Source: Oikopleura dioica | Taxonomy: Eukaryota > Animalia > Chordata | Direction: 5' to 3' | Length of the DNA: 64,000 nucleotides | Assembly (NCBI GenBank): GCA_907165135.1 | Contig: OU015568.1 | Span: forward strand, 5,704,001-5,768,000 | Part shown: positions 30,410-58,343 of the stretch, in pieces | How positions within the stretch are numbered: position 1 is the stretch's first letter | Layout: the number at the start of each line of letters is the position of its first letter | The notes under the pieces: generated by a model | The model's database searches: none | What the model was told of the DNA's origin: nothing | What the model saw: the letters and a program-made list of their open reading frames with translations, nothing else | Position numbers and translations under genes: made by a program

Positions 30410-31646
30410 CTAGAGTTTTCTCATAATAATCAAGAACAGAATCAGAGCGAGGAGAATCTTCCAGTTGAGGAGATGCGAGTCAGGCACTTCAAAGTACGGT
30501 GGAAGAATGTTCATGAACCACAGAGTCGCCAAAGCGATGATGATGATCAATCGCAGCACGATTGAAATTGTCTGCTTCCTCACCATCGCCTAATAAAAAC
30601 CAATCAATAAAGGTGTTCGAAGCAAAATGGCACCTTGTAGTTGACATTCTCTGCCAGCTCAGCGATCACTCCCCCGAGGCGATTTTTATGTGGAAGCGGG
30701 CAGGAAGGAACTGGTTTTTCAAGAAACTTGCAAATCGGTTCCCAGCCATCTTCGATCTTCCAAATCAACAGTTGGTCCTTTGGGCAAGTATTCATCACGT
30801 ACATATTGTGCATTCTACGGAGAAGATATTGATGATGTTTGGAAGGAAGGAAAACCTGTATTTGAGGCGATGAATGTCCATATTTTCGCCGACAAAGTCG
30901 CGCGATTCTGGGCCGAGCAGAAGCGGGCGAATCCAGTCCATGTAAAGACCCATCGCTCGGGATGAATGATTGAAGACCCAACTGTAGATGCCGCGGTGGA
31001 GCCTCCACCAGGACATTTCTTTGAAAGTATCTCGCTCCACCTTAAGGGCATCACCTCATTAAACAACCGAAAGCACAAGCAGTACCTGAAGATGTTTGTG
31101 AACAGAATTCGCCCAGGCGTCTTCGTCCCTGATCGCCAAAATCACTAGAAAATGGCTTAAAATTGACCTTCATCAATGATTTTTTGCACCCTTAGCATTC
31201 GGAAATTGCTTCAAAATCTGTTCCCAATAAGCATTGTGCGGCAAATCGACGCACGCCGTGTAGCCATCCTTATTTCCCGGTCCAAAGAGCTTCATCAGAA
31301 CGCTATTTGGATCCTTGCCATTTGCAATTTTCTCCCAATCCTGCCAGTGGCGATAAACGGCCTCGGGCGCGTCGCAAACTTTGTACCCTAATTGCTGAAA
31401 AAACACATTTTCCGAAGATCTTTTCCCAACTTACAGTCAGCATAGCATTCATACTCTTCGTTCCAGTCTTACAGTAGCCCGCATTGATCACCTGTAGCCC
31501 AGGATTGGGACCACATTCTCCTGGGCTCGGCAACCTGTGCAGAAAACCTGAGTCAGGGTTTGAAGTATCTCTTTTTCCATGAGATTCTCCAAACCCTGAC
31601 TCAGGTTTTCTACACAGGTTTCTGAGCCCAGACATTCTCTATCCAT
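30410..31646 (-). CDS. P-loop sulfotransferase (Sulfotransfer_4-like) with two C-terminal TM helices
   Basis: VINAGYCKTGTKSM (PAPS-binding loop), LGYKVCD, ACVDLP, VILVIRD..W, GWEPICKFL..PVP..P.PHKN. Tail IVLRLIIIIALATLWF...KILLALILFLIIMRKL*. Confidence 0.75.
31521..31631. mobile_element. CTGGGCTC-TIR MITE forming the first intron of the sulfotransferase (Introner-like)
   Basis: ~38-bp TIRs and perfect 8-bp TSD ACATTCTC (31513-31520, 31632-31639). Confidence 0.9.
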
Positions 31647-35960: not shown

Positions 35961-38900
35961 ATGATTATGAGGAGAGCGAGACTACTGGGAGGATTATTGC
36001 TAATTACAGTCAGAGCACAGGACCAATCAAGCAACCTGTGGAAGAATTGCGATCCAAATGGACAGAGAGCTTGCTGCATTAGCAACTGTAAATGCTTGTA
36101 CGAAGATGATCAGACCATCAACAAAATTGAGGTACTTCGGGTTTGGGTTTTTCATCATTTTTATTTATAATTTTAATATATTTTCAGTGCACTGATAAAA
36201 AATTGCGCGTGATTCAGCAACCAAGTCAGCCTGCTTCGATCAAAGAATATGACCTTTCCCGTAACAATATCGAGAGCATCCCGAGGGACACCTTCAAGGG
36301 CATGCTCTCTTTGGAGACGTTGAACATTTCCCGGAACTCGTTGTCTTCCCTCGATCCAGGTTCCTTTTCCGGGCTTTCCCAGACGCTTCGTGTTTTGGAC
36401 TTGAGCTCAAACAACTTCCAGCAGCTCCCGACTCGTGCTTTCAAGGTCAGAAAGAGAGCTTAATTACTGTCCAATCTGATCCAATTCAATTTCAGGCGGT
36501 GCTCGGACTGACAAAATTGTACGTTTCGCGCAATCAAGTGAAGAAACTCGGCCCACTCGAGTTCGCTCCTCTTGGCAATTTGTCCCTCATCGACATTAGT
36601 TTCAACCCGGGCGTGGAAGTTTCCGATGATGCCTTCAGGCAACTCGATAATTTACGCGATTTAGGCAATCACGGTCGAAATTTTTATTTTATTTACGACA
36701 TTTCGAGATGTCACGCAACATTTCGGGACATTTATAGACATTTTGAAATATTCTTTGACATCTTGAGACATCAAAAGACATCTTTTCAAATCAACAGAGA
36801 ATTCAAGACATCTTGAGACATTGGCAAACATTTTGAGACATCTGGAAACATTTAAGACACCTCAAATGTCACAAAATATCTCGAAGGATTTCTGAATGTT
36901 TCATGATGTCTTGAAATGTCTGAAAAATTGCAAAGGATACCTTTTGATGTCTTCCGATGTCAACACAAATTTTTTGATGTCTACCGATTTTCTCAAATGT
37001 CTCTGATTGCTAAAGACATTTGGTGACATCCAGGGACATCGTAAGGCATCTAAAGACATCTAATATACGACATAACTCATTTTGACCTATGAAAAAGTCT
37101 TCAAAAACTGCAAGTTAACAAAGATCCCGGATTTTACCGATGCCCGCCGCGAAATTCGCCGTTTGAACTTGGCCGGCAATAATTTAGTGAAAATCACGAC
37201 GACGAACTTCAAAAATATGCGATTGCTGGAGACATTGATTTTGAGGAATAATGCGATTACTTCTATCGACCAAGGGTCATTTGAGGTTCTGCTGGAAATC
37301 TAATGAAATTTTGAATTTAACTTAATTTAGGGTCTCGAAGCGTTGAAGGTCCTGGACTTGTCGAATAATCAACTTACCACTTTGCCTGAAGGAAAATGTC
37401 AACATAGCAAAAAAATGTCAGTTCTGTCAGCAAACGCAGAAATTTCAAGATTTTGGGGGGAGAAAATGACCATTCTAGACTTATACTTATCATTCACGTG
37501 ACAATGTTGACATTTCTGACATTCGCAATAAAAGCTGATTTGTCGGAAATGTCAGAAATGTCAACAACGGCGCGAAAACAACCATAAGTTATTAACTCAA
37601 GATGATTGACGTTTATTCTGACAGATTTCCTCACAAAAAATCCTGACATTTCTGACAATGCTGACAAATGTGACTTTCATGATGAACTTAATTCTAGCCG
37701 ATTGTTTCACAAATCAGAATGCGATCTATTGAAAAGAGACTCAATTTAGAGTTCTTAAAAGTCAAAAATGCACAATCTGTAAATCTTTAAACTTTGCGGT
37801 AATTGGAAATGTTGTTGACAAACGAACAGGTTTAATATTTTACACCAACGTGCTCCAAAAGCTGTATCTGACGGGGATGAAGTGGAACTGCGACTGCGAC
37901 ATTTGGTGGCTCACTGAACTCTTCAGGCACTTGTTCTTTCAATTATTTCATCATCGCTTGTTTCCTTGTTTCAAAATTGGACGATAACTTATTCACGAGC
38001 GAAGTTCTCTTCCTTGATTGCAAATTGAAAAACAAGTTCAAAAGCAAGCGGCCGGATTTGCTCGAAAGTGCAGATTCAAAACCGAAATGTGCTCAGCCGA
38101 TAAAATGGCTGAACTATCCGCTGGACAAGCTGAACGACAAGTACTCCGGAGCCTGGTGCAAGACTAGAAAGTTCTTCGGTGAGTCATTATCAGATACGGT
38201 CCAAATGAGGTACTCGTGCTAAGGGTCAGGGTAAGCTAAATAGAAAACATGAACCATGGGTATGGGGTCTTTTCTGATTGGCAATTGCGTAGAATAAAGG
38301 CTTCTGATTGGCTGAAAATTTGGAGCTTCAACAACCCCTTGGAATGTCTTTTCAAATAGGGACCTTCTTTCTTAAAATTTTGATATGTAATATTTTTGAT
38401 TCTTTGTCTTATTCTTAATAGAGCCCTACCGTATTTATGGTAAATAAAATAAACATCAAATTATAATCTAAACGACGATTTTATGCAACCGCTTTTCGAT
38501 TAGATCTGGGGAGAATATCTCAAGGGTAAAGATAGATACTTCTCCTTCTGTAATCGAGATAAGGTCGTATCATCAATTCTTAATTTTATATGCGCCGGGT
38601 GTTCGTCGCTAGATAATGCATTTTACAGTCGCTATTCAAAAAGCACATAAATGACGATTTTAAATTGACAAGAGACGAACTCGATTGGTTTCTTTAGAAT
38701 TAAAATAGAGGAAAAGTAAGTCGCTGAATAAAATATGAAATAACTTGTTTGAATAAGACCCTTTTATTAATGACGGAATATTCTAAATTTGCATGGTTCT
38801 ATTGGAAAAGAAAGAGGTAGATCCAATTTTAAAATTGCAAATTTTCGGGTATTCACCAAAAAAAACGAGATTTAAGGTAATGACCCCCTTATTTTTTTCA

Positions 38901-41900
38901 TTTTAGGCGATAATCTAACTCCCTTTATTTAATGAAAATTTGAAATCTTTGTAGAAAAATTCTTTTTCGAGCGTTTTCTCCGAAGTTTTACATAGTGACA
39001 CCCTTATTCAACTTGGGGAGCAGAATTTTTCTAGCTCCAATAAAAGACGAATTTCAAGAAAAAACTTCAATTTTCGGCCTATTAATTTTAAAGACTAATG
39101 ATTGGAGCAAGAAAGTGTCTTCTTTCGAAGTTAAATAAGGGCGTCTTTTTGAAAAATTTTTCGAGAAAAAAAGCCCAAAAATTATATTTTGTACAAAGAT
39201 GTCAAATTTTCTTCCTTGATTTCATCAATTAGTTTGAGTTTTTTTGACCTTCGAAAGTGATTAAGTATTTTCTCCGAAATTAATCCCCACAATTAGCTGT
39301 CCCGCAAACAAAACCTCATTTCAAGTGGTCTCCTTTTCATCTCATCTTTGATTCATCAAGTCTGACAGTCAGTTTCTCCATTTTCGCATTTCAAAAAGAA
39401 AATCATATTTTCGAGCATAAAAACCCATCATCATCAATAGCGGATAAATTGATGCAGCCGAATTTGCATCCATAAATATGGATTCGGCCTTTTTTCGCGG
39501 CGCAGAAAGTTAAATTGACCATTGTCGATTTCGCGCAAAATAAGAAAAGGACACGCTTTTGGCCGCAGCGCGGCGCCACTTTTTTTTTCTTCATTCTTTT
39601 TTTTTCATTTCTTGCTCTCTTTTCCCTTCCCTTCGAGCTTCTGACAATCTGAGAAGCTGCCCAAAACTCCACCGCGAAATAAGTTTTTTAATTGACAGAA
39701 AAATCGTTTTCAAAAAAGAAATTCAAAAAAAAAAGAGATGATAAAAGTTCAAGAGACCAATTAAAGGGTTCAAAAAAGAAGAAAAAAAGGAGTTACGAAA
39801 AAAAATATTCAAAAAAAATTTCAAAGAGAAAATAAAATCGGAAAGCCGCTTGCGGCTTCGAGCAAGATGAGTCAAAAAGCCGCGCTTCGCCGGGCGGCTT
39901 TAATTCATTTTGGCTCGAAGCCGCAAGCGGCTTCTCGATTTTGAATTCTCTTTGAATTTTTTTCGAGAAATTAGCTTGAAAATCACCTGATTTTTTCTTA
40001 TTTTTTTTATATGTTTGCTTTTCTTTTCAATCCTTTCAAAAAGCTTAAAGTCCAAAAGCGCAGAAAACGAACAGATCGAGCCGTAAAATCTAACCCGTCC
40101 GATTCAGTGAACAAATTCGCCCGGACAGGTGTCGAAGGCTCGGACATTCAACTCGAGTGCAAATCGCTCAGGTCACAATCAAACGCCCAGCAAAATGGCC
40201 AGATAAAGTGGTTTGGGCCCGATGGAAAGGACATCACGTGAGTTTTCCGAATTTAATTTTCTTGTAAAAGCGAGAAGCCGCTTGCGGCTTTGAGTAAAAC
40301 TTACAAAAAGCCGCACTTCCGCGGCTTATTTTTTATTTCTCGAAATTATTTTTGTTCTAAAATCGAGAAGCCGCTTGCGGCTTCGAGCAATCAAAAATAA
40401 AAGCCGCGCGAGCGCGGCTTTTTCTTGATCATACTCGAAGCCGCAAGCGGCTTCTCGATTTTAGAACAAAAATAATTTCGAGAATAAAAAATTAGCCGCG
40501 GAAGGGCGGCTTTTTGTAAGTTTAACTCAAAGCCGCAAGCAGCGTCTTGATTTTTTTGAAGAAAAGTCCTAAAAATCAAAAAATAATTTTCTGTGTCAAA
40601 AATTTTGACTCAAAATGGTTGTTTTAGCTTACAGTCGCAAAATTACAAGACGCGTGTTCAAGTATCCGGCTCAACGCTGAAAATAAAGAGCTTGCGCATT
40701 GATGATAGCGGCACTTGGACATGCTATAATGAAGACACTGATTACGTCGGTAAGTAGCAAGCGGGATCAACTGAGGCTTAGACACGATGAAACAAGCCTT
40801 GAGTTGATCAATTTGAAAAAGACCCAGGGGAGGGGAGATGCAATAACGCCCTTCTTGGATTGACTTTATTGCTTTTCCGATACTTAGAAAAAGAGATTGT
40901 CAGTTGAGATTCCATTATTCAGGATGAACTCGTGACATAGTAACATTATTCTTCGTAAACAAGTTTTACCAATAATTTTGACACGTCATTATGGATCATC
41001 AATAATGACCAACAGTCATCATTGGTTGAACTTTTCGCCGCAAAGAAATGATAAGAAACCAAAAAGCCGCTTGCGGCTTCGAGCAAAACTAAATCTTAGC
41101 CGCGCATAGCGCGGCTTTTTCTCATTCTTGCTCGAAGCCGCAATATTTTCGAGCATGAATGAGAAAAGCCGCGCTATGCGCGGCTAAGATTTAGTTTTGC
41201 TCGAAGCCGCAAGCGGCTTTTTGTTTTCTTATCATTTCTTTGCGGCAATAAGTTCAATCAAAAATAGCCTAAATTTATCTAAAATAAATTCAAGCGGACA
41301 CGGAGTTTACCGTCACCCCAGCATCGGGCGGCCCAACAACATTATTCTCGACATCGACGATCCGCGCCGTCGAGTCCGTCACTTCTGGCCCGAACGCGGT
41401 GCTGAACACCGAGCAGTCTGCTCCCGCCGCCTCGCCTTCTATCGTCAAAGCCGCCGCGGAAAATTCCGAAGCAAAAACAAGCAGCAGCGACAGTACTAGC
41501 ACTGGCGAGCCGCTACGGAGGACGAGGCTCGTGATTAGTTTATTTATTGGTTTGACGGTTGTCTGCGCTATTGTTTTAATTGTCTTTTACAAGGTGAGCA
41601 GCAGTTTAGAAAAAATCCACCGTCTCTTTTCTTCTGAGCTGAGTGTTGATACAGTTATATTTCAGAAGCGAAGGCGAAAGTCGCACAGAAATGATTGGGA
41701 AACGCGAAAACTCAGGCCGGAGGAACAAAATGGGAATGCAGGAGGAAGGGTTTCTGGACAACAACTGACTCGTTCCTCGATTTCTTCGCACAGGGTAAGT
41801 TCAGGAGGGGAAGGGTTGGGGGGGGGTCTGAGGAGGGCATGGGGGGTTTGCTAGCCTCTGATTGGCTGATGGAATACTGGCCCCTCATTGGCTGAAGGTA

Positions 41901-42530
41901 CCTATTCCCCCACCTTTTCAAAGGGCCCCTCCTCCTATCCATAAAGAAAACCCCCCTCCCGTTTAGCCGCAAATGATAAGAAAAAGAGCGATAAGGGGGT
42001 GTAGCTCAAATGGTAGAGCGCTCGCTTAGCATGCGAGAGGTACCGGGATCGATACCCGGCATCTCCAAATACTTCCTTTTTCAACCCTTTTTCGTTTCAG
42101 AAAACTGACGAGCAAATTCGCCCTCTTCGCCAATCACCCCCAATCGACCCCGAAGACGCTCTCGGAACCCCAATCGGACCGCCGGAGACGATTTCAAAGA
42201 GCAGGATCGAAAGTAGCGGCGCTGGAACACTTCCTTCCCAGAAAACACGGTCCAAAGCGGATATTGCCGAAGATCGAAGAGAAAATCGAAAATTTCATTC
42301 TCAACCGGGAACTTTAGGTATTTTTCGTTTACTCACTTTATCGATTCGAGTTGCATTTGAGATCAATTTTTTTTACTGGAACTGTCAAAATTTCTTTTAA
42401 CAGTTTGAGTTTGCTTTTTTACCAATAACTCATTTTTATTTCTTACAGGGAGAAATGGAAGAGTGAAAGATATCGTTCATCATTTAGAGTCAAATCCACC
42501 AAGGAAAGTTTCATCTGCTCGATTTTTTCT
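35961..42530 (+). CDS. Type I membrane LRR-Ig protein (LRRN/LINGO/LRIT-like architecture)
   Basis: Signal peptide, LRRNT (CISNCKC), multiple LxxLxLxxNxL repeats, LRRCT (WNCDCDIWWL...PKCAQP), Ig (IQLECK...IKWFGPDG...DDSGTWTC), Ser/Thr stalk, TM VISLFIGLTVVCAIVLIVFY and basic stop-transfer. The 3' end is uncertain. Confidence 0.8.
36700..37080. repeat. GACAT-rich degenerate minisatellite/MITE in an LRR-gene intron
   Basis: Many gacat(c/t)ttga / atgtc units in opposite orientations in the two halves. Confidence 0.55.
40273..40545. repeat. Large nested AAGCCGC palindrome (intronic)
   Basis: A ~270-bp inverted repeat centred on aagccgcgcgagcgcggctt, with AAGCCGCTTGCGGCTT modules in each arm. Confidence 0.8.
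41037..41245. repeat. Near-perfect ~210-bp AAGCCGC-family hairpin (intronic)
   Basis: ccgcaaagaaatgataagaaa... pairs with ...tttcttatcatttctttgcgg. Confidence 0.8.
41995..42067 (+). tRNA. trnA-AGC: tRNA-Ala (AGC)
   Basis: 73-nt cloverleaf: acceptor GGGGGTG/CATCTCC+A, D-arm GCTCAAATGGTAGAGC, anticodon arm CTCGC-TTAGCAT-GCGAG, T-arm CCGGG-ATCGATA-CCCGG. Confidence 0.95.
42077..42081 (+). terminator. Pol III oligo(T) terminator of tRNA-Ala
   Basis: T5 run starting 10 nt after the discriminator base. Confidence 0.7.
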
Positions 42531-44144
42531 GTTTCAGTTGTGCTCGATTCACTTTTTGTCAATTTTGTCGGTTGTTTCATTTCATATCTGTTTGTTGTTT
42601 CATCGAGGAAGTACTGTACTACAGTACTACTGTAGTATCATTCTATCATATCATAAGAAAGAGGTTGGGAGTAGCCGATTGGAAAGTTAGGGTTAAGCCG
42701 ATATCGGCAACCTGTGAAGAAAGCCTGACTCAGGGTCTGAAAGATCTTAAATAAATTACCGACTAGCGCCTTTTTTTAAGAAACCGCAGAGCGTTGCCGA
42801 CATATTTTATGTATCCATCAAATTTCGATTCTTTTGAAGCCGCTCTGCGGCTTAATTAGAAAAAAGCTGCTACGCGGCTTTTCATTAAAAATCTTTCAGA
42901 CCCTGACTCAGGTTTTTTACACAGGTTTCCGAGCCTTGTTAATTAACCCGTTCGGATAATGACCATTTTGTTGGCAGAGCATTTTGTGGTTATTCGAGCC
43001 ATCTGCCAATGAATTGGTCAATGTGCGCGAAGGGGTTAAATAATATTTTAAATGAAAATCGATTTCTGTACGTTATTCTTTGTCTCAATAATTCGGGAAC
43101 TCTGGTTTATAATTTGTATAATCGTCGAGTTTCAAAAAGGCATTTTATGAAACTGCTCTCAGATGTGTTACGAATCCCAGCTCGCCAGTGAAAACAACTC
43201 CCAATGGAGTCGCAACTCTTGGTAATCATTCTCAATGTAAATAAGAAACTTTCTTTTTTTCTTCCATTTTTTAACGAAAATTCTAGCCGCCTTTTTTCAT
43301 TTCGCTAACAACAATTCTAGCGCACCATGTGTACAGAACGCGAACGCTGAGCAAAAGCGAAATGGAACAGAATCTGACGTTTTTGCCCCAAAGCATCGAA
43401 AAACTTCCCCTTCAGGAGACTGCCATCTGAACTCCAGAAAAATATTATTTTATTTTCAAAAATTGCTTTCTTCACAAAACTGCCAGCTTTCCAATAAATG
43501 CAAATACTAACAAAAAAATGACAATTTTTACAAATTATGAAGGAAAAAGTCGCAAAGAACTTCAATGTCGTCATGTCCAGTTTTCTCCGCTAAGTTGTCT
43601 TCTTTTGCATTTTCCATCATTTCTTGAAATTATTATATTATTTCTTCCTATATTATTATTTAATTTCTTCCTTGCTCTAGAATTTACCTTGCAAGCATTC
43701 AAATCGAAGTCTTTCCTGTTCGTTTTCGTCATTTTTTCTTCTTACTTTTTCACTGTAAACTGGTTGACCAAGCAAGCAAAAAAGTAATAAGCAAAAGAAA
43801 GAATAAAGCATAATTGTCAAAAAATTTTATGAAAAAATGTCTATTCTGATCAGCGCTCGGAAATTCGCACGCTCAAATGAAGCCCTGGTTCGATTATTTC
43901 TACGTTAACTTTATATTTCCGACCAAGAAGTTCTTTTAAACCCCGCTAAAAGTAAAAAAAACAAAGAAGAATCCTGGACTGACCCCAAATGTCCCGCCTT
44001 GCGTTTTCTTTGCTTTGCTTGTTAGTTATTACGATCTCTTTGCGCCAACACTTGCCTTTGTCCCGTAACATTTGATATTTGCATATCTTCTATTTAACCC
44101 GCCTCCCGCCTCCCCAAACCTCAATTTTACAAAAAAAAAAAACG

Positions 44145-47799: not shown

Positions 47800-48303
47800 T
47801 ACTAAAATTCTTTGAAGAAGAAGGCACGAATTTCGACAAAATTAAGACCTAGTATTGCTTCAAGGTTTTTCCCACAGAATTGATGGAAAAAATGAAGAAT
47901 GATTATGAAGAGCGTAAAAATGATAAGAAGCGAGTAACCTCTCCAGTAGGGTGATGGTTCCTCTTCTTCAGAAATCTCTGCAGGCGTATCAGAAACAGCT
48001 TCATCAGTGGCAGCTTAAAAATGGGGTAAATATTTCTTTCTTATCTGAATTTGCGCTTTGAAGTCTCATTTTCGCTTGCTGAATCGGAGGTTGAAGAATC
48101 AGAGTCGAGAAAACGCCAGAGTCTGGCTCTAGAAGGGGAATTGTTCGGGCGGGATTCGGTTTAGTTGATTTGGGCCGAAGAGCTTCGGAAAGAACAACTT
48201 TGCCTTGAACAATAGTTAGTTGATAAGGAGTCCCACCGAGCTCAGTGATAATCGAGGAGACTTTCTTATTCAAAGCAATCAAGTTATCCAATCTTGATTC
48301 CAT
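47800..48303 (-). CDS. Small tail-anchored membrane protein, with a paralogous 3' exon at ~44850-45020
   Basis: 99-aa ORF plus a downstream exon WRGYSLLIIFTLFIIILHFFHQFCG. The paralog reads WRGFSFLINFHFTLFIIILHFFHQYYG. Confidence 0.45.
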
Positions 48304-48502
48304 TCTTAATCATGTATATAAAGCATGTTAATATCTCTTAAGACGATTAAATGTATAAGGAAGTACCTCTCCTCTTCGACTGAATTTGGTAAAAATCATT
48401 GCGTTAGTTCCAAATGTCACGATCGTAAAACTCCTCCTTGCGAAGAGAGACCTTTCAGTAAATCCAGATAAGATCCTGGTTTCTTCTTTCGAGATTTTCA
48501 AG

Positions 48503-50097
48503 ATGAAAAAGCTTTCGTTCTTTTTCTTATTTGCCGCGGAGAAAACAGTTTGCTCAAGAAGCTACTACTACTACGGATATCACAAGGAGGATCCTTATGC
48601 AGAGAGTCCTTGCTACTCGGACAACCACAATTGCCATCCGACCGAAAATTGCGTCCCAGAGGGTCAGCATCTTTACCAATGCTGCGATATGGGCTACAAG
48701 TACGATTACAGCACTCATTGTCGCCAGGGAAATCGTGAGTTTTGAGTCGAACGGGTCGAAAATTAGAAAAAATTCTAGCGCACCCGTGCCTTGAAAAAAA
48801 TACCTGTAATGATGGAGAGTTTTGCCATCGAATCGTCAAGCCAAATGAAGAAACTAACGATTACGAGTGCATCAAAAAGGATGACAAGTGCATCGGTAAT
48901 CGCTCGTACCAATCTTTATCTACCATTTTGAAATTAAGGGGTGGCAATGTGCACGGAGTTCTACCAAGGCTCCTGTTCGGCCAACAACAAAGAGGAAAAG
49001 CAACCAATCAGAATCGCTGTCAAGAGCGTTGACGACTGCTTCTGGGCTCCGCAACCTGTGTAAAAACCTGAGTCAGGGTCTGAGAAAATCTTTTTCGCGC
49101 CTTTCTAGACCCTGACTCAGGTTTTCAACACAGGTTTCGGAGCTCAGGACTGCTACAACGAGTGCAAAAACAACGAGGAATGCAAGGGCTTCGATTTGGA
49201 CGAAAAAGGTGGCTGTCTTCTTGCGTTTCAAGATTGCCGCGAGAAGGATTTAGACAAACACCCAATTTTCGAGTGAGGCCCCTTTTATAATAAGATTTTC
49301 AATTTATTTCAGAAAATACTCGGATCACAAAGACTTCTATTATTATTATCAAGAATACTACTGGAAAGACCAAAGCGTAGAGAAAAAGCAGCTCTCTTAC
49401 ACTTATTACCCAATGAAGGGATGTTTCACTCCAGGTTTGAGCACAATTCTAGCTGTCTGGCTCATTTTAGAGCTCTAGAACGGGATGAAGACTGCGACAA
49501 AACCCTCGCTGATCATCTTGAGGACATTTACTTTGATCTTCTCGGACGAATGGACAAGCTAGCGCCGGTTTTTCTCGCCCAATTCGCGAAAAAGAAAGAT
49601 AGAGAAAATGAAGAGCGCGAGTTTCGGAAAAAAGGAAAGTTCAAAAAATAATGATCAGACAAAAGCCGACAAAAAACCTGAGTCAGGGTAAAAGAGAAAA
49701 ATCCGCCAAGCCGATCTTTCGAACCCTGACTCAGGTTTTTAACACAGGTTTTCGAGCCGAGGCTTTCAACATTTATTGAACTAAGGAAAGTGATTATGCT
49801 TGTGACAGTACTCGGCTCGATTCTGGTTGTTCTAGCGTTCATTTTCGTTGTTTTTCGGATCGTAAGAAGCAGCCGAAAAGCTGACCCAGGAGTCCAAATG
49901 ACTGAAAATCGACAACATCATCAAAATCCGGCTCCGATTTCGGATTCATCTGTTACTGGCGTTGTTGCTCCTTTTCCATTCAACGGTAATCAGAGCAAAT
50001 AAAAACCATAATCAACGATTTCTATTAAGATTCCGCTCCAACATACTCCGAAATCGACGAATTTGGTTCAAATGTAAATCTCGCCAAGTCTTTTTAA
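48503..50097 (+). CDS. Type I membrane protein with EGF-like and PAN/apple-like domains
   Basis: Signal peptide, two Cys-rich EGF-like units, CTEFYQGSC...SVDDCYNECKNNEECKGF...GGCLL, TM VIMLVTVLGSILVVLAFIFVVF, and cytoplasmic PTYSEI. Confidence 0.65.
49042..49147. mobile_element. CTGGGCTC-TIR MITE forming an intron in the PAN domain (Introner-like)
   Basis: TSD GACTGCTT / GACTGCTA (49034-49041, 49148-49155). The element ends ...gagctcAG. Confidence 0.85.
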
Positions 50098-50459
50098 AAT
50101 CTGCACGTGACGAAAAAATGCATGAAAAATCAACCCTTTTCAAAAAATAAACAGAATCAAGACTCCTTTCTCCTCGTTTTTGTCCCATTTTGGAATCAAG
50201 GAAGACTCACACCCCGCGCCCTTGAACCCTAAACCGACTGCTTCCCAATTGGTCGCCCTGAGGCTTTCACATCGCGCGATTCATTGTCCCGCTGAAGAGT
50301 CGAGAAAAGACCAAATAATGAAAATGTACGTGGTTGCGTAATTACCCCGCACAATAGTGAAGAGAGAGAGAGTCATTGCTGCTGAGATGTTGATTTTTTG
50401 AATGCGCGCGCGTTTGGATCTGATTTAATCTTATTTCAATTTTTAAAAAAGAGAGAAAG

Positions 50460-52116
50460 ATGCTGGGGAAAACGACCAGGGAAGACTTTGAATGGGTTTA
50501 TTCGGACCAGCCTCATACTCAAAGAAGAACTCTGATGCTCAAGAAATATCCAGTGATTAAAACTCTCATGGGCGCAGGAAAGGCTTTATTTTCTCGCGTA
50601 GGAACAGACCACTAGATCGCCTTATACAACTATTATTCACAAGAAAAACAAAGTTTGCAAATATTTATTTTTTCATTTTATTCTGAAGCCAAAAAGATCC
50701 GAACGAAATTCTCGTCGTAACATCCATGGTTTTCGCCCAAGTCCTCGCCTGCTACTTTCTTCAAGATTCTTCCTGGTTCACCATCGTCCTCATGGCGTAC
50801 ATCTTCGGCGGAACCATCAACCATTCCCTGACTCTTGCGATTCACGATATTGGGCACAACACTGCTTTTGGAACGGGAGTCAAAAACGCGTGGAAAAATC
50901 GATATTTCGGCTTTGTCGCGAATTTGCCTCTTGGAGTTCCCTATTCTGTTACTTTTAAAAAGTACCATATTGGTAAGACCTTCCTAGAAAAAATCAAAAA
51001 GCCGCTTGCGGCTTCGAGCTCAAAAAAAAAAACAAAAAAGCCGCGCTTCGTGCGGCTCAAGCGTTTTTGGCTCGAACCGCAAACGGCTTATGGTTTTTCA
51101 CCCTGAATTTTATGAAAATTTTAAGATCATCATCGCTACCTGGCCGGAGATGGTCTTGACACCGATTTACCAACAGAATGGGAAGGAAAGTTCTTCACCA
51201 ACGGTCCACTCAAACTCCTCTGGCTCTTTTTAAACCCTCTTTTCTACGCGCTTCGGCCCATGATTGTCCGCCCCAAGACTCCAACTCACTACGAATTCAA
51301 GGTAAAACCCACCCAAATCGACGAAAAATGAGAGATTTAGAATTGGATTGTTCAAATTATCTTTGATGTTTGGATTTATCGATCTTTCGGAGGAAAGGCG
51401 ATGGCATATTTGCTCATTGGAACTTTTCTTTCGCTTGGAATTCATCCAATTGCTGGGCATTTTATCGCAGAGCACTACATGTTTGTCAAGGTAAGAAAAT
51501 GACTAAACTTTTTTTTCTTGAGAAAAACCGAGAAGTCGCTTGCGGCTTCGAGCTGTTTAGCCGCACTTGGCGCGGCTTAAATTTAACTGCACTCGAAGCC
51601 GCAAGCGGCTAATTGTCCCTGGAGCTCTAGAATTCATATCAAAATTAAGGGTGTCGATACCTTCTCCTACTACGGACCTTTGAACATGCTAACCTTCAAC
51701 GTCGGCTACCACAACGAGCACCACGATTTTCCGTTCATTCCGGCTTCGCATCTTCCCGAGCTGCGAAAGATCGCACCTGAGTTTTACGAAGAAGTTCCCC
51801 AACTTCAAAGCTGGATCATGGTTTTGTACGATTATGTGATGGACCCGAAAAATGGACCTTTCAATCGAGTTAGGAGAAGATTCGATGTTGATGGAAAAGT
51901 CGTCAAGCCAAAGGTGAGCATTTTAAGAGTATCCCTTCTTTAAAAATATCTCAGGAGGGAAGCAGCTACACTGACGAACACGCGCGATTAGGCAAGAACT
52001 CCGACCACGATCCTGTCTACCCAAATCAAGCCGAAAACAACAACTCTCAAGCTTCAATTTTCCGGCCAAGCTCAAATGTTATCGCCAAAAGCTTTCTCCA
52101 TGCCAGCCGAAATTGA
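50460..52116 (+). CDS. DEGS1: Sphingolipid delta(4)-desaturase
   Basis: [13 protein letters not shown], His boxes HDIGH, HIDHH and [38 protein letters not shown]. The first intron (50578-50696) is GA-AG. Confidence 0.93.
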
Positions 52117-54169
52117 TGAAAAGCCTAACCCTTTTTTTCTTTTTATTACATTTCTTAGTTCAAATAATAATAAAAGATTTACGAAAAGGCTGCATGAACC
52201 CTCTTCTGAAAATTAAAAATGCGTTTAAATTGAGATTGAACGAGTAAGCAGGACATTTTTCGGAAAATAAAGCAGAATTCATTTTTCAAAAATAGAAAAT
52301 AAAGGGCGGAACTCAAAATCAGAATTTTCCTCCTTGATTTCAAGCAATAAAAACTCGAAAACAAAAGCTCTTTCACTTGTTTTAGCGCTGTCTACTTTTT
52401 TTCTCGAAGTCGAAAACAGACCAGGGTCAAGTTCAAAAAAAATCTAAAATTCACACACTGTTATAATAATTTTTAATTTTTTTTTTGAAAAAATTATTTA
52501 TAATTTGCATACTCTGTAGTTTTCATTTTTAGTCATCCTTGATTTTTTTCAAAGCCGGTCTATATTAAATAGACTCTGACGATTAATCACGTGATAACAT
52601 TTTTTGAATGAAAAGAAATCGATCTCATGGATCGACCTTGTTTAAAAAAAGTAGACTTCAAAATGAACAACATAGAAAATTTTGCACAGGGTCATGGAAT
52701 GTTGACTTGTCTAGGGCGTGTTTGCTCTTTCAGCTCATAAAAAAAATGATGAAAAACTTGAAAATTTTAGTTTCCAAGCTAGAATTTTCAAGGAAAAAAT
52801 AATTAAGAACTTCATGTTTTTCCGTCAAAATAATACTGCTTTCATGAAGTAGCCAAAGTCGGGTAAAAAGAATGATTCGCTTAGTTTTGATTTGATTGAA
52901 AATAAGGGTGTCACTGTCTAAAAAGTCGAACTCAAAATCTCGATTCTCTTTTTTGACAATTATTTCAAAAAAAGGCTCCAAAAAAGAGGGCTAGAATGGC
53001 CATTTTTTCTTGCTGTTGGATGAAAAATGATAAGCACTAAAAGAAAGATAAGCTTTAAAGTTTAAACTTTTAAGAAAGTCCGGCCGAGGTCAGATTTAAT
53101 TCGTGACCTCTGCGAGCAGTCCATCTCGGAAGTAGGTCAGTCTTCATTTGTTAAACTCTCGATTGGTCGCAATGGTTTAGCCCTGTCCAATCAGGAGGGC
53201 CCTTTCGCCTCGATCTCGAGCTCAATTCCGCTTCTACGCGCTGAAACTAGTTACATAACTCGTATTTACCGATTTTTCACCTTTCTCTCGTCGATTTCGG
53301 CCACTTTTCGACCTCCCCAGGTCATCCAGAGAGTTAATAGAGAGTCCTGACCAATCATAGTCCTCCAGACTAGTTACGTAATAGCTATTACATAACTAGT
53401 AGTTATGTAACAATTTGAGAACTGGCCCAGTTGCGTTCAGACGCCATTTTTCACCAAAACGAAGAAAACAATAACGAAAAAATCGATTGCGAAAAACAAC
53501 TTCATTTCAATAATTACGAATTAGTTGCTAAGTATTATTTAACTGCTATTATAAAAGAAAATGGAGGGGGCTTATTGAAGCGGAAAATAAGTAATCGAGC
53601 GATGGAGGGCTTTGATTTAGGAATAAAATTTCACGCTCTATTGCATTTTTTCGATCCTGAAAAAGATTCTCCTTTTGCTTATGATAACAAAGTCACACCC
53701 TTATTGTTTCTCTGCAAAGAAACGATGAAGGTTTCAGCTTCCTTTTATCAAATTATATAAGGGTATCACTATCCATAATTTACCTGAAACCCATGAAAAT
53801 GTATTTGAGTTTTTAGTACTCTTATTGAGACTGTGCTCAGGAGCCTGTGTAGAAAACCTGAGTCAGGGTTTCAAATATCTCAAATGAAAAGCCGCGTAGC
53901 GGCTTTTTTCGAAAGTGGAGCCGCAAAGCGGCTTCGCTATAACATTGCAATCGAAAAAAAATTAAAGATCTTAAGACCCTGACTCAGGTTTTCAACACAG
54001 GTTGCCGGCTGGAAAATCGCTTGTAAATTTATATATATAGTTTCATATCTTGTGATTACTCTCACCCTACTCTTGAAAATATTATATAAGCGGTTGTATA
54101 AGACCTGTGAGAGTCTATTTTTAAGTCCATTGCTCAACACAGGCTTGTATTTAGAAGCGGTAGCTTCAG

Positions 54170-57100
54170 GAAAATGTAAATGTCGGTCGCATATCAAAAA
54201 ATGTGAAAAGCAGCGATGATCATCAAAACCAACGCATCCAGGGCGACGAGCTAGACGACACCTACGCCGACTTTTTCGACAAGTTTTTTGACGCGCGAGA
54301 GCGGCAAAATGAACATCTCCAGGTTTGAACTCCTCTTTGTTGCCTTCGAGACAATTTCTGTTTTTAGAAATCGTCGCCTCAGAATTCCGTCGAGTCTTAT
54401 CACGGCTCATCCGCGTCATCCCCCACCGAGTCAAACAGTCAGCCGCTGGAGAAGATTGTAACAAGAAGGAGGAATCGAGGCAGTGGAGATTCAAAACAAC
54501 TGGTTAGTTTTTAAGTTAGAACATACTCGTCTCACGCTTTAAGGACCCCCGTCAGCTTTTTTGAAAAATCAAATTTCGGAATTTTAAAATTTTGACCCCG
54601 GAAATGGATTCTATGGGTCAAAAAACGATTTTAAGGCTTTATTTTTTGGGGTCTATCTCGACTCCTTCACCCTTAAAATCGCATTTGAAAATTCGGAATT
54701 TCGCCGAAAATTGACGAATTTTGGCAAAAATATTGATTTTTCTTGGTCAAATCTTCGTCATATCAAGTTTTTGAAGCAAGTTTAACTTAAGGGTACATAA
54801 AGAACCAAAAATATGGTGTTTTTAAAAATTTCAATTTTTCGGAGGAAAAAGCTGACGGGGGGTCCTTAAATCCAAGCTTATAATAAGGGCGTCTCTACGC
54901 TTTGGGTTAAGAAAACTGGTATCTATTCAAAAGAAAAATAGAATAAGGGTGTTACCGTCTTAAATTTCCTCAAAGCCTTCTTGAAATGGGACTTTCTGTA
55001 AGAATTTCAAAAAATAATAAGACGGTGACACCCTTATTCTATTTTCAGATAGATACCAGTTTTCATAACCAAAAGACTAGAGACACCCTTATTTTAGCTC
55101 GGACGTAAAGCATGAGAGAATGAAGCGAAATCAAAATAAGGGTGTCCCTAGCCTATCCTTTTCCAAAGCAAGAAAATCATTAAAAATTCTAGCTCTGCGC
55201 TGTCTGCTCGGACAAATCAACCGGCTACCATTTCAATGCATTGACGTGCGAGGGCTGCAAAGGAAAAATTAAAAAATTTTGAATCTAATTTCAAAAAATC
55301 CAAAACTTAGAAAAATTCTAAGAATTAGAAACTTTCTTCTTGCGCTAAAGAGACTCTTTTAAAAACGACCAAAATCATATTCAAGACCACTCCTTCTCTT
55401 TCAGGATTGATTATTCCCGTCATAATTTAAATTAACCTAATTAGCCTAAAATGCCATTAAATTGGAATCGAAATTTAGTTAAGGGTGTCAACAAGCCTTT
55501 TTTCTTCAATTTTATTTTTGATTGTATACCCTTATTTTTAAGGGCCTCCCTTCAAAATCGATTAAAAAAAACTTTTAAATTCGTAAAAAAAATCAACCTT
55601 GTTGACACCCTTAAGCTTCAAACTAAGACCAAATCTTTAATTTCAATCAGGATTCTTCCGGTTAGTTCTAATTTTATATTTTCCGATAAATTCGACGATT
55701 GACATTTTTATTTTAAACACCTTAGTCGTTGCATCCGTGGGGACAAGAAATTTGCTTGCGGGTATGGGGTTCAATTGTTTTTCTCAAAGTAGAAAATCCT
55801 TTTTCTTATCTTTTATTATGAGTTCGAATAGGGCACATGGCTTAAAAATGTAATTGTATTAAAATTTTAAGGGATACTCACAGAGATCATTAATTCTGGT
55901 TCAATTATGCTGGCGTCTATGTGCCCTTTTTAGTTGAAGGCAGGGGTGTCCCTCGAAATTTTTTATGCAAGATTTTTTGGTTAGATTTATCATTGCCCCA
56001 CCCTTATTTTATTGTTCGATAACAGCAATTACAAAGCGCCTAAACTTATAATTTCGCTAAAATTTTGTCAGGAAAATCGTTAATTTTCCCGTTTTCCGAC
56101 TAAAATAAGCAAAAAAAATTAAGGGTGTCACAATGATAAATTTTCAAAAAAATTGCTCATAAATTATCTTCTCAAAATTTTTTTTTATTTAAGAATAAGG
56201 GGCCTAATTATTCAAAATTATCTTAAAATAGACGATAACTACCTTACTAGAGATAAGAAAGAGATCCCTTTAATTTCATGTGTTAAAAATAAGCTGTCAA
56301 AGACGCTCGGACACCCCTCTCTCTCGGATCCAGTCACCAGAATTTATTCCTTACTCTTCGTTGATTTCACTCGATTGGATGTTTTTAACAACTGGTGACT
56401 TAGGATTTGAACCGGCAATTTTCGCCGTAGCGTATTAACGGTCCTTTGACAAAACGTTGAATTCTTCTACGATATGGTGGCAACTGCGAGATCAACCGCG
56501 AGAACCGAAAGAAGTGCCAGTCCTGCCGACTTGACAAGTGCCGCGCTGCTGGGATGAAGGCGCAATGCGTTTTGAATGAAGGCGAACTTTTGCAAAAGAA
56601 GAAAATTATTGAAAGAAACAAGTAAGGCAGCAGAAAGAATAGATTCTTCCACGGGATTTTACGGTCCAGCGACGGACAGATGCACCTAAGTAAACTTATT
56701 CAAGACAAAATAGCAATTATCTTTTCTTTTTTGTCTTTTCGAATTTCAAAAATAACAACTGTCACTTACAGTAAGGATGAATTCCCTTCTTAATAATTTT
56801 TTTAAATTTAAAACGTCAGACCCCCTTAAATTTTCAATAATCTTTTGTTTGTCGGTCACTAAGTCTCGTTTTGTTATTATTTTTTGACGGATCGCTATGT
56901 CTAAGATTAGTTATCTACAGACGAATTATGACCAGTTATTTTGTCTTTTTCTCCACTAGCATCGTATAAATGCGGAAATAAACCGTCTTTTCTTCAGAAT
57001 AAAAAGAAGCATCAATCCCGTCTCACCTCTCAGCTCCGAAGAGCTCGACCGAATGTCCTTCATCGTCAAAGCTTACAAGTATGGATTTTTCTTGTTACAG

Positions 57101-58343
57101 TGATTTTCAGTCGGTTTTATAGAAAATGTTTTGCAAAAGAAATGCGCGTGGAAGAATTCATCAACGCCGACTTCTTCATCAACTGGAAATCGCTCAATCG
57201 ACAACGCGACAGCAACAGCTATAGTTCCGAATCAGGTACACACCATCCCTTTCTTCTAGCGAAACAAGGCTTAGACGTGAAATTCGAAGTCGTCCTCAGA
57301 AATCAAAGCAGACAAATCATCGAAATTTCAATCGACATGGAAAAAATTCTGCACCTCGCTGATGTCGCTACTTCAATGACTTTTGTAAGTTGAAACTTTT
57401 GGACCTTTTTTGAAGAAGGAATTTAGGATGTGGTTAATTTTGTGAAGGAAGTGCCTGATTTCAAGCAATTGGATGAGCAAGATCAAGTTATAATAATTAG
57501 AAATGCGGCTGTTGAGGTAAAGAAATTTCGGCAAAACCATAAAACAAAAAATATCTTAGGTTCACTTGCTCAACATCTGCGATTTCTACAACTGCGAAAA
57601 AGGCCAGATCGAAATCGGCCAGTGTTCGTATCCAGTTCACAAGCTCACTGCAGCAGGAGTCGCTTCATCGTTTCTAGAAAAATTCCAAAAATTCGTCAAA
57701 TCAATCTATTCCCTCCAACTTCGCGAAGAAGAAAAGGCCTTGGTAAGTCCTCTCTCCTCTTGACCATTTCGAAGTCCTCAATTAAGGCCTTGATGATTAT
57801 TTTATTCTCAGAAGACAGAGGTTCAAAAGCTGAGAGTTTGTCTCAAATTCAGGTTGGCGGTTTTTTGAAATCAAGGAAGAGTACCACCTTTTTGAGGAAT
57901 CATATGCGATGACACTGAAAGAAATTTTGGATGCGCGACGGGGAGCAAAATCAAAACGAAATATTTTCGCCGTAAGTCTGATTCTACAAGAGGGCCTTCT
58001 TTAATTGTTGATAAATCATGCCCCATTGGACCCCTTGATTATTGATATAGTGTACCCCTGTATTCTTAAAGTGTTCAAAATGACGACGTGACAACAAAAA
58101 GATGACTCATTTGCGAGTCACGTCGTCATTTTCAACACTCAAAGAACACAGGGGTATGCTATATCAAAAGTCGAGGGGGCTAAAAAGACCCCAAATCATC
58201 CCTCTTTTCAGGAGCTTATGTTCCTTCTCTCCGAGCTGCGGCGCCTCTCCGTCTCCTGCCGTCCGTATTTAATCGCCTTCTCCGATTCCTGCCACGATCA
58301 GTTAAACCCAGTTCTTCGCGAAATTTTCAGCCCCGTCGAATAA
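54170..58343 (+). CDS. Nuclear receptor of the NR1H/NR1I group (LXR/FXR/VDR/PXR/CAR-like)
   Basis: DBD [27 protein letters not shown]...CGYGGNC...RKKCQSCRLDKC (exons 55193-55262, 55651-55660, 55726-55761, 56472-56621). LBD signature FVKEVPDFKQLDEQDQVIII, LFSEDR, and AF-2 PVLREIF. The start codon lies upstream of 54170 and was not fixed. Confidence 0.9.
54543..54865. mobile_element. Kolobok-like MITE in a nuclear receptor intron
   Basis: ttaa|ggacccccgtcagcttttt ... aaaaagctgacggggggtcc|ttaa. Confidence 0.75.

What the first reader, a model, noticed from the sequence alone, without database searches (positions are those of the whole stretch)
49034..49155. Second independent Introner-like insertion: GA-AG intron inside a PAN domain
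Seen: AGC GTT GAC|GACTGCTT-CTGGGCTC...GAGCTCAG|GACTGCTA C AAC GAG TGC. Splicing 49034-49147 (114 nt, GA...AG) restores KSVDDCYNECKNNEECKGF with normal PAN cysteine spacing. The geometry matches the sulfotransferase case, and again the TSD begins with GA. The gene, strand and interior differ, so the insertion is independent. A more decayed copy at ~49670-49760 in the same gene also lies in an intron whose two ends share GAAAGT.
Basis: partly seen in the sequence, partly recalled or inferred. Interest (0 to 1): 0.8.

Follow-up and report, generated by a model that had tools for sequence, protein, structure and literature searches.

The report
Transposon-made GA-AG intron in Oikopleura
A 106-base hairpin transposon landed inside a coding exon of an Oikopleura dioica membrane-protein gene, and the public gene model removes it, with one copy of its 8-base target duplication, as a GA-AG intron. 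This is a clear but not new-in-kind case of a transposon becoming an intron.

Summary
Window 49034-49147 is 114 nt and runs GA...AG. It consists of one copy of an 8-bp target-site duplication plus a 106-nt MITE with about 40-nt inverted ends. The MITE family has at least 9 two-armed copies in the window.

The window is Oikopleura dioica OKI2018_I69, OU015568.1. The public protein model g9983 maps 100% onto it and already skips exactly these 114 nt, giving KSVDDCYNEC.

An environmental ortholog contig (L006) carries the empty site with a single GACTGCTA. dS against the window gene is about 1.1 and dN/dS is 0.07. Six annotated paralogs or homologs also have no intron at this codon, so this is a lineage-specific insertion. 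It differs in gene, strand, duplicated target sequence and interior from the sulfotransferase copy, so the two insertions are independent.

The junction lies inside a weak PAN_1 match (22.0 bits; cut-off 21.4).

Splicing was not seen directly: four RNA runs laid no reads. It rests on the hint-based public model and on conserved spacing.

The second, decayed copy sits in an older GA-AG intron that MITE-free homologs share; it did not create that intron.

Other notes of this scan reported the same kind of thing elsewhere in this genome (s1-322911, s1-338581). Transposon-derived introns are known, so this is a new member of a known kind.

The parts
48503..50097 (+). Gene OKI2018_I69.PAR.g9983: 8 exons, 369 aa. 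The product has a signal peptide, Cys-rich EGF-like regions, a PAN/Apple-like domain, a transmembrane helix and a short tail.
   Evidence: P0009 maps 100% onto the window.
49034..49147 (+). 114-nt GA-AG intron, phase 0. It equals the upstream duplication copy plus the MITE.
   Evidence: There is a 114-nt gap in the P0009 mapping, and exactly 114 nt are absent from ortholog contig L006.
49034..49041 (+). Upstream copy of the 8-bp target-site duplication (GACTGCTT). Its first two bases are the donor GA.
49042..49147 (.). 106-nt MITE, a short deletion derivative of a family with 8-bp target-site duplications.
49042..49081 (.). Left terminal inverted repeat.
   Evidence: 95% identical to the family consensus arm.
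49107..49147 (.). Right terminal inverted repeat. It ends in ...GAGCTCAG, which supplies the acceptor AG.
49148..49155 (+). Downstream copy of the duplication (GACTGCTA). It is exonic and identical to the single copy at the empty site.
49061..49063 (+). In-frame TAA that would end the protein if the element were retained (...DDCFWAPQPV*).
48939..49033 (+). Exon 3, the N-terminal half of the PAN-like domain.
49148..49272 (+). Exon 4, the C-terminal half of the PAN-like domain.
49635..49790 (+). Second GA-AG intron (156 nt), just before the transmembrane exon. It is an old intron position shared with Bergen homolog P0010 and OKI paralog P0002.
49651..49761 (.). Second, decayed MITE copy nested in that intron. 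The left arm is recognisable only at 49673-49689; the right arm is 49723-49761.

Best explanation
A non-autonomous DNA transposon inserted at GACTGCTA inside the exon that encodes the PAN-like domain of gene g9983. It is a MITE with about 40-nt inverted ends and an 8-bp target-site duplication. The insertion happened in the Okinawa lineage of Oikopleura dioica, after that lineage split from the one represented by contig L006 (shown).

If retained, the element puts a TAA ten codons into the insert (shown in the sequence).

The gene most likely stays functional because the permissive U2 spliceosome of O. dioica removes exactly the upstream duplication copy plus the element. The donor would be the G-A that happens to start the duplication, and the acceptor the CAG that ends the inverted repeat. 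The mRNA would then be identical to the pre-insertion one (inferred from the public hint-based gene model and conserved spacing; not seen in RNA here).

The roughly 50-bp hairpin places the acceptor at the foot of the stem and the donor 8 nt from it. That may help pair the two sites (inferred).

Only insertions whose duplication starts with G would be scarlessly removable in this way. That would act as a survivorship filter on exonic insertions of this family (inferred).
For: - Identity of the window: it is 100% identical to OU015568.1 over 21,595 nt.
- Public model: P0009 maps at 100% and skips exactly 114 nt.
- Empty site: L006 aligns with the flanking introns at the same positions and lacks exactly the 114 nt, keeping one GACTGCTA. 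Its ORF P0011 reads ...IAVKSVDDCYNECK....
- No intron at this codon in P0002, P0003, P0005, P0012, P0013 (OKI) or P0010 (Bergen).
- Family traits: 23 core matches against 0.04 expected; 9 two-armed copies; 8-bp duplications at 8/8, 7/8, 7/8, 6/8 and 6/8.
- Constraint: dN/dS is 0.07 and dS 1.08 over 177 codons against L006, and all 369 codons are intact.
- Domain: PAN_1 rises from 14.8 bits for exon 4 alone to 22.0 bits across the restored junction.
- Hairpin: z = -10.7.
- Literature: 11% of introns in this assembly are non-canonical, and the models were built with RNA-seq intron hints (PMC8008620).
Against: - No RNA read was laid on 48300-50300 from four RNA runs carrying the same species label. 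That is no test, but it is also no support.
- The paper does not say which non-canonical splice sites AUGUSTUS was allowed to use. That a GA-AG intron in the model implies read support therefore rests on my knowledge of how AUGUSTUS behaves.
- After the first base, the donor GACTGC matches the usual GTAAGT only at +5.
- The upstream duplication copy differs from the downstream one at its last base.
- The dN/dS figure averages over both lineages. It does not isolate the time since the insertion.
Confidence: 0.8

Rival explanations
1. The insertion is a null or hypomorphic allele. The element is not removed, or only rarely, so the transcript ends at the TAA at 49061 and the GA-AG intron is a convenience of the gene predictor.
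For: No RNA reads were obtained. The donor is weak. O. dioica populations are highly polymorphic and the assembly is from one male (PMC8008620). Several paralogs could buffer a loss.
Against: The rest of the 369-codon frame is intact. The element has diverged from the family consensus: its arms are about 95-97% identical to it, more diverged at the outer right end, and the duplication has one mismatch. So it is not brand new. The predictor used RNA hints, and to my knowledge it places non-GT/GC donors only where a hint supports them.
Confidence: 0.12
2. The element is removed with the canonical GT at 49028 and the same acceptor (GT-AG, 120 nt). This gives KS|DCYNEC, two residues shorter.
For: GT at 49028-29 is in frame with the AG at 49146-47. 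Canonical donors are the majority in this genome.
Against: All eight family members, including the empty-site ortholog, keep the two residues (V-x-S-[VLI]-[DGE]-D-C). The public model does not use this donor.
Confidence: 0.05
3. The intron is old and was lost precisely from L006 and from all the paralogs. Alternatively, the transposon excised from them.
For: Intron loss is frequent in Oikopleura (general knowledge).
Against: The intron is a member of a dispersed MITE family and is flanked by an 8-bp duplication, of which the empty site holds exactly one copy. Cut-and-paste excision normally leaves both copies or a footprint (general knowledge). This reading needs at least 7 independent precise losses against one gain.
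Confidence: 0.02

Closest known systems
Introner elements of Micromonas and Aureococcus (Huff, Zilberman & Roy 2016), as summarised in PMC11282704
   Same: A short non-autonomous DNA transposon with inverted ends and a target-site duplication. One splice site comes from the element and the other from the duplication, so splicing removes the element plus one duplication copy without a scar.
   Different: Here the host is a chordate, the duplication is 8 bp rather than 3 bp, and the element gives the acceptor while the duplication gives the donor. The donor is the non-canonical GA. Genome-wide use of this family as introns was not measured here.
MITE-derived non-canonical introns of Fritillaria borealis (Henriet et al. 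2019), read only through PMC11282704 and PMC13326754
   Same: A larvacean tunicate whose lineage-specific introns carry inverted ends and target duplications, and whose permissive U2 spliceosome neutralises transposon insertions.
   Different: F. borealis introns are mostly AG-AC or AG-AT and make up about 95% of its introns. O. dioica keeps the AG acceptor, varies only the second donor base, and about 11% of its introns are non-canonical.
G*-AG non-canonical introns and transposon-insertion intron gains of O. dioica (Denoeud et al. 2010), as cited in PMC3296678, PMC3443670 and PMC8008620
   Same: The same species, the same GA-AG class and the same proposed origin by transposon insertion.
   Different: I could not read the 2010 paper. 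I cannot say whether this MITE family, its 8-bp duplication or the donor-from-duplication geometry was described there. That work used the Bergen lineage, whose homolog lacks this intron.
hAT-superfamily MITEs
   Same: The 8-bp target-site duplication.
   Different: The roughly 40-nt inverted ends starting CTGGG are not the short ends I recall as typical of hAT elements. No transposase partner was looked for.

Membership tests
Introner-type transposon-derived spliceosomal intron | Member of a multi-copy family of similar elements | tested here: met
   23 core matches against 0.04 expected; 9 two-armed copies in 64 kb; alignment A3.
Introner-type transposon-derived spliceosomal intron | Terminal inverted repeats and a target-site duplication | tested here: met
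   The 8-bp duplication matches 7/8 here and at 6/8 or better in 5 of 9 copies.
Introner-type transposon-derived spliceosomal intron | The intron equals the element plus one duplication copy, with one splice site from the element and the other from the duplication | tested here: met
   The P0009 mapping has a gap of exactly 114 nt. GA is the start of the duplication and AG is the end of the inverted repeat.
Introner-type transposon-derived spliceosomal intron | An orthologous empty site shows the gain | tested here: met
   L006 lacks exactly the 114 nt and keeps one GACTGCTA. Six paralogs or homologs have no intron at this site.
Introner-type transposon-derived spliceosomal intron | Splicing seen in RNA | tested here: inconclusive
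   0 reads were laid from 4 RNA runs. The only indirect support is the RNA-hinted public model.
Introner-type transposon-derived spliceosomal intron | Many family copies serve as introns genome-wide | not tested
   Only this copy was checked against a gene model. Other scan notes claim more cases.
hAT-superfamily MITE | 8-bp target-site duplication | tested here: met
hAT-superfamily MITE | Related autonomous element with a hAT transposase and matching ends | not tested
   No search was made for a transposase partner.
O. dioica G*-AG non-canonical U2 intron | Starts with G plus a non-T base, ends in AG, and is annotated in a gene model | tested here: met
   11% of introns in this assembly are non-canonical (PMC8008620).
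PAN/Apple domain (PF00024) | Score at or above Pfam's gathering cut-off | tested here: met
   P0009:112-195 scores 22.0 bits against 21.4, E = 1.4e-4, with the match spanning the junction. All 8 family members match at E <= 1. The whole protein P0009 gave no hit at E <= 0.1, and P0010 scored 20.1 bits, so the assignment is marginal.
PAN/Apple domain (PF00024) | Conserved cysteine framework | tested here: met
   Six cysteines are invariant in alignment A2. There is a weak profile match to the apple-domain lectin 2yil, E = 0.45.

The most novel reading that the evidence does not exclude
This MITE family, with its 8-bp target-site duplication, may be a working introner family in a chordate, and its geometry may explain the peculiar splice-site spectrum of O. 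dioica. The acceptor is always AG because it is the last two bases of the inverted end. The donor is whatever starts the host-derived duplication, so only the first G is required. That would produce the species' GA-, GC- and GG-AG introns and feed its fast, lineage-specific intron gain. Old GA-AG introns such as 49635-49790, which Bergen shares, would then be decayed descendants of the same process.
Probability: 0.3. Interest if true: 0.6.

Novelty: new member of a known kind. Interest (0 to 1): 0.35.

Why it matters
This is a clean, datable example in a chordate of an exonic transposon insertion turned into an intron without changing the protein. The pre-insertion sequence is preserved in a related lineage. 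It gives a concrete substrate for testing how the O. dioica spliceosome accepts a GA donor that the host sequence supplies by chance, and whether the transposon hairpin helps. On its own it does not change what is known. Transposon-derived introns are established, GA-AG introns are a known trait of the species, and this intron is already in the public annotation.

Tried and rejected
- RNA reads: four RNA runs carrying the same species label laid no read on 48300-50300 at 90% or more likeness. That is no test.
- Full-length spliced protein as a query: left out, because it has no reference and I did not type it. I searched exon 1 by reference instead. That led to the public protein ids.
- Contig L001 (TARA metagenome): 96% identical to exon 1 at the protein level, but only 660 nt long. 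It stops short of the site.
- JGI metagenome scan for the filled or empty junction: two matches, both in contigs from one set; the one I read (L009) is 58% G+C and unrelated around the match, so I take both as chance.
- Rfam on 48400-50200: nothing.
- Profile search of solved structures: only weak hits. TFPI at E = 0.016 is a Cys-rich match outside the Kunitz repeats, and an apple-domain lectin scored E = 0.45.
- The two GAAAGT copies at the ends of the second intron as a target duplication: rejected. The copies are 151 nt apart, which would shift the frame. The annotated intron is 156 nt. The GAAAG motif at the acceptor is also present in the MITE-free homologous introns.
- My first models for exons 5/6 and 6/7 (AG at 49472; GT-AG 49639-49785): replaced by the public model, which homolog spacing supports.
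- I first recalled Henriet 2019 as being about O. dioica. It is about Fritillaria borealis.

Full report
**What is there**

Window 49034-49147 is 114 nt, starts GA and ends AG. It is made of GACTGCTT (49034-41) followed by a 106-nt element at 49042-49147. The next 8 nt downstream are GACTGCTA.

The element's two ends are inverted repeats. The repeat finder gives arms of 25 nt at 84% and 19 nt at 100% complementarity. As RNA, the interval folds into one long hairpin of -74.6 kcal/mol. Shuffles average -35.6, z = -10.7, and 0 of 200 fold as well.

**It is a transposon family**

- The 15-nt core AACCTGAGTCAGGGT occurs 23 times in the window at up to 2 mismatches, against 0.04 expected.
- A 45-nt consensus arm finds 9 two-armed copies and a few solo arms.
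- The flanking 8-mers match 8/8, 7/8, 7/8, 6/8 and 6/8 in five of the nine copies. The family therefore makes 8-bp target-site duplications.
- Long copies of 176-241 nt carry internal GC-rich hairpins. The copy studied here and the one at 31521-31631 are short derivatives.

**Where the window comes from and what the gene is**

Exon 1, searched by reference against the representative library, returned Oikopleura dioica OKI2018_I69 proteins and a 96%-identical metagenome fragment. A word search then returned P0009, which is Oidioi.mRNA.OKI2018_I69.PAR.g9983.t1 (369 aa).

P0009 maps at 100% onto window 48503-50097 in eight exons. The 21.6-kb locus fetched for it is identical to window 38503-60097. 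The window is therefore OU015568.1:5,704,001-5,768,000.

The product has a signal peptide, Cys-rich EGF-like stretches, a PAN/Apple-like domain and a transmembrane helix. The PAN call is marginal but positive:
- Exon 4 alone scores 14.8 bits.
- P0009:112-195, which crosses the junction, scores 22.0 bits against a cut-off of 21.4.
- All eight family members hit PAN_1.
- Six cysteines are invariant in the domain alignment.
- The whole protein gave no PAN hit at E <= 0.1.

**The intron is already in the public model**

The P0009 mapping has a gap of exactly 114 nt at this place and reads ...IAVKSVDDCYNECK.... Because the 8-mer is duplicated, the cut could be drawn in eight registers. Only 49034-49147 begins with G and ends with AG.

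The models of this assembly were made with AUGUSTUS using RNA-seq intron hints and transcript exon hints. The authors report 11% non-canonical introns (PMC8008620). The paper does not name the splice sites that were allowed. That a GA-AG intron in the model implies read support is my inference from how AUGUSTUS treats non-GT/GC sites.

**It is a gain by insertion**

A search with the ORF that runs from inside the element through exon 4 found one protein, P0011 (71 aa). It comes from a 759-nt ENA metagenome contig and reads MCTEFYQGSCS...IAVKSVDDCYNECK... without interruption.

At the DNA level this contig (L006) aligns to window 48645-49420. The flanking introns are at the same positions but strongly diverged. 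The contig lacks exactly the 114 nt and keeps a single GACTGCTA.

Over 177 codons:

| Measure | Value |
|---|---|
| Amino-acid identity | 86% |
| dS | 1.08 |
| dN | 0.076 |
| dN/dS | 0.07 |

L006 is therefore an ortholog from a well-separated lineage, and the gene is under purifying selection.

Five OKI paralogs (P0002, P0003, P0005, P0012, P0013) and the closest Bergen homolog (P0010, FN654109.1) have no intron at this codon. All keep the V-x-S-[VLI]-[DGE]-D-C-[YF] spacing. The Bergen scaffold has no trace of the MITE core. One gain in the Okinawa lineage explains all of this. Precise loss everywhere else does not.

**Independence from the sulfotransferase copy**

The copy at 31521-31631 has a perfect 8-bp duplication, ACATTCTC. 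Read on the minus strand, that is GAGAATGT followed by an element ending ...CCCAG. It is again GA...AG, but with a different duplication, loop, strand and gene.

**How it most likely works**

Shown:
- The insertion, its duplication and the empty site.
- The in-frame TAA at 49061-63 that would truncate the protein if the element stayed in the mRNA.
- The exact match between the element plus one duplication copy and the annotated intron.

Inferred:
- The U2 spliceosome of O. dioica, known to accept G-non-T donors, uses the GA that starts the upstream duplication copy and the CAG that ends the inverted repeat. This restores the original mRNA.
- The hairpin puts the acceptor at the foot of a roughly 50-bp stem and the donor 8 nt from it. 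That may help pair the sites.
- Because the donor comes from host sequence, exonic insertions of this family would be tolerated only where the duplication starts with G.

I could not test splicing. Four RNA runs carrying the species label laid no read at all on the gene, so the runs were no test.

**Rivals**

- A null allele that is not spliced: 0.12.
- Use of the in-frame canonical GT at 49028, which would drop Val-Asp. Homolog spacing and the public model argue against it: 0.05.
- An old intron lost elsewhere: 0.02.

**The second copy**

The copy at about 49651-49761 has a full right arm and a truncated left arm. It lies in the annotated 156-nt intron 49635-49790, which is also GA-AG (FRKK|VIML).

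Bergen P0010 and OKI paralog P0002 have an intron at the same aligned position. Those introns are 62 and 58 nt, contain no MITE, and are also GA-AG ending in GAAAG. So this is an old non-canonical intron into which the MITE later fell.

The shared GAAAGT is the intron's own conserved end motif, not a duplication made by this copy. Outside the MITE, the window's intron also has an outer stem (49638-54 with 49766-82). The two homologous introns show no significant fold.

**Comparison with what is known**

- Transposon insertion as a source of introns in Oikopleura is credited to Denoeud et al. 2010 by PMC3296678 and PMC3443670.
- MITE-derived non-canonical introns in the larvacean Fritillaria borealis (Henriet 2019) and the introner mechanism of Huff et al. 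2016 are summarised in PMC11282704.
- In the introner mechanism, one splice site comes from the element and the other from the duplication.
- Gozashti 2022 does not mention Oikopleura in its main text.
- The geometry here is the introner one, with the roles swapped and a GA donor.

Other notes of this scan describe the same family at coding junctions elsewhere in this genome. I used them as leads only.

**Verdict**

This is a new, well-documented member of a known kind, and the intron itself is already in the public annotation. RNA proof is still missing.

Noticed in passing
window 49635-49790; L005:2257-2318; L003:2269-2326: The intron just before the transmembrane exon is GA-AG in the Okinawa gene, its Bergen homolog and an Okinawa paralog. 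All three end in GAAAG. It is a conserved non-canonical intron that predates the MITE nested in the Okinawa copy.
   Followed up: partly
window 49638-49654 and 49766-49782: A 17-nt outer stem (82% complementary) closes the second intron 3 nt inside the donor and 8 nt before the acceptor, outside the nested MITE. The MITE-free homologous introns show no significant fold (z = 0.59 and -0.49).
   Followed up: partly
L005:1151-1209 (Bergen FN654109.1): The first intron of the Bergen homolog reads as GA-AG (59 nt). It has a 9-nt near-terminal inverted repeat (ATGTTCATC / GATGAACAT). The position is not shared by the other family members.
   Followed up: no
window 42698-42938 and 53831-54014: Two further copies of the same MITE family lie inside annotated gene ranges: the LRR/Ig gene at 38503-43430, and the gene at 50460-55282. 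Their 8-bp flanks match poorly (2/8 and 3/8). Whether they sit in introns or exons was not checked.
   Followed up: no
window 50460-55282 and 56554-58343: One public model of 470 aa carries Lipid_DES and FA_desaturase together with a zf-C4 nuclear-receptor DNA-binding domain. The next gene carries only the Hormone_recep ligand-binding domain. This looks like a desaturase gene merged with the 5' half of a nuclear receptor gene.
   Followed up: no
L002, L003, L004, L007, and window 48503-50097: The gene belongs to an Oikopleura-restricted family with the layout signal peptide, EGF-like, PAN-like, transmembrane. At least 7 Okinawa members were seen (chr1 g261 and g896; chr2 g4612, g4613, g5185 and g5187; PAR g9983). 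No relatives outside Oikopleura-like sequences turned up in the searches run.
   Followed up: partly
L001 (TARA_SAMEA2730900 scaffold_342308) and L006 (ERZ27264819 k141_897469): Ocean metagenome assemblies hold contigs of this gene from two Oikopleura populations. One is 96% identical in exon 1 protein. The other stands at dS of about 1.1. Such contigs can serve as natural outgroups for insertion dating.
   Followed up: partly
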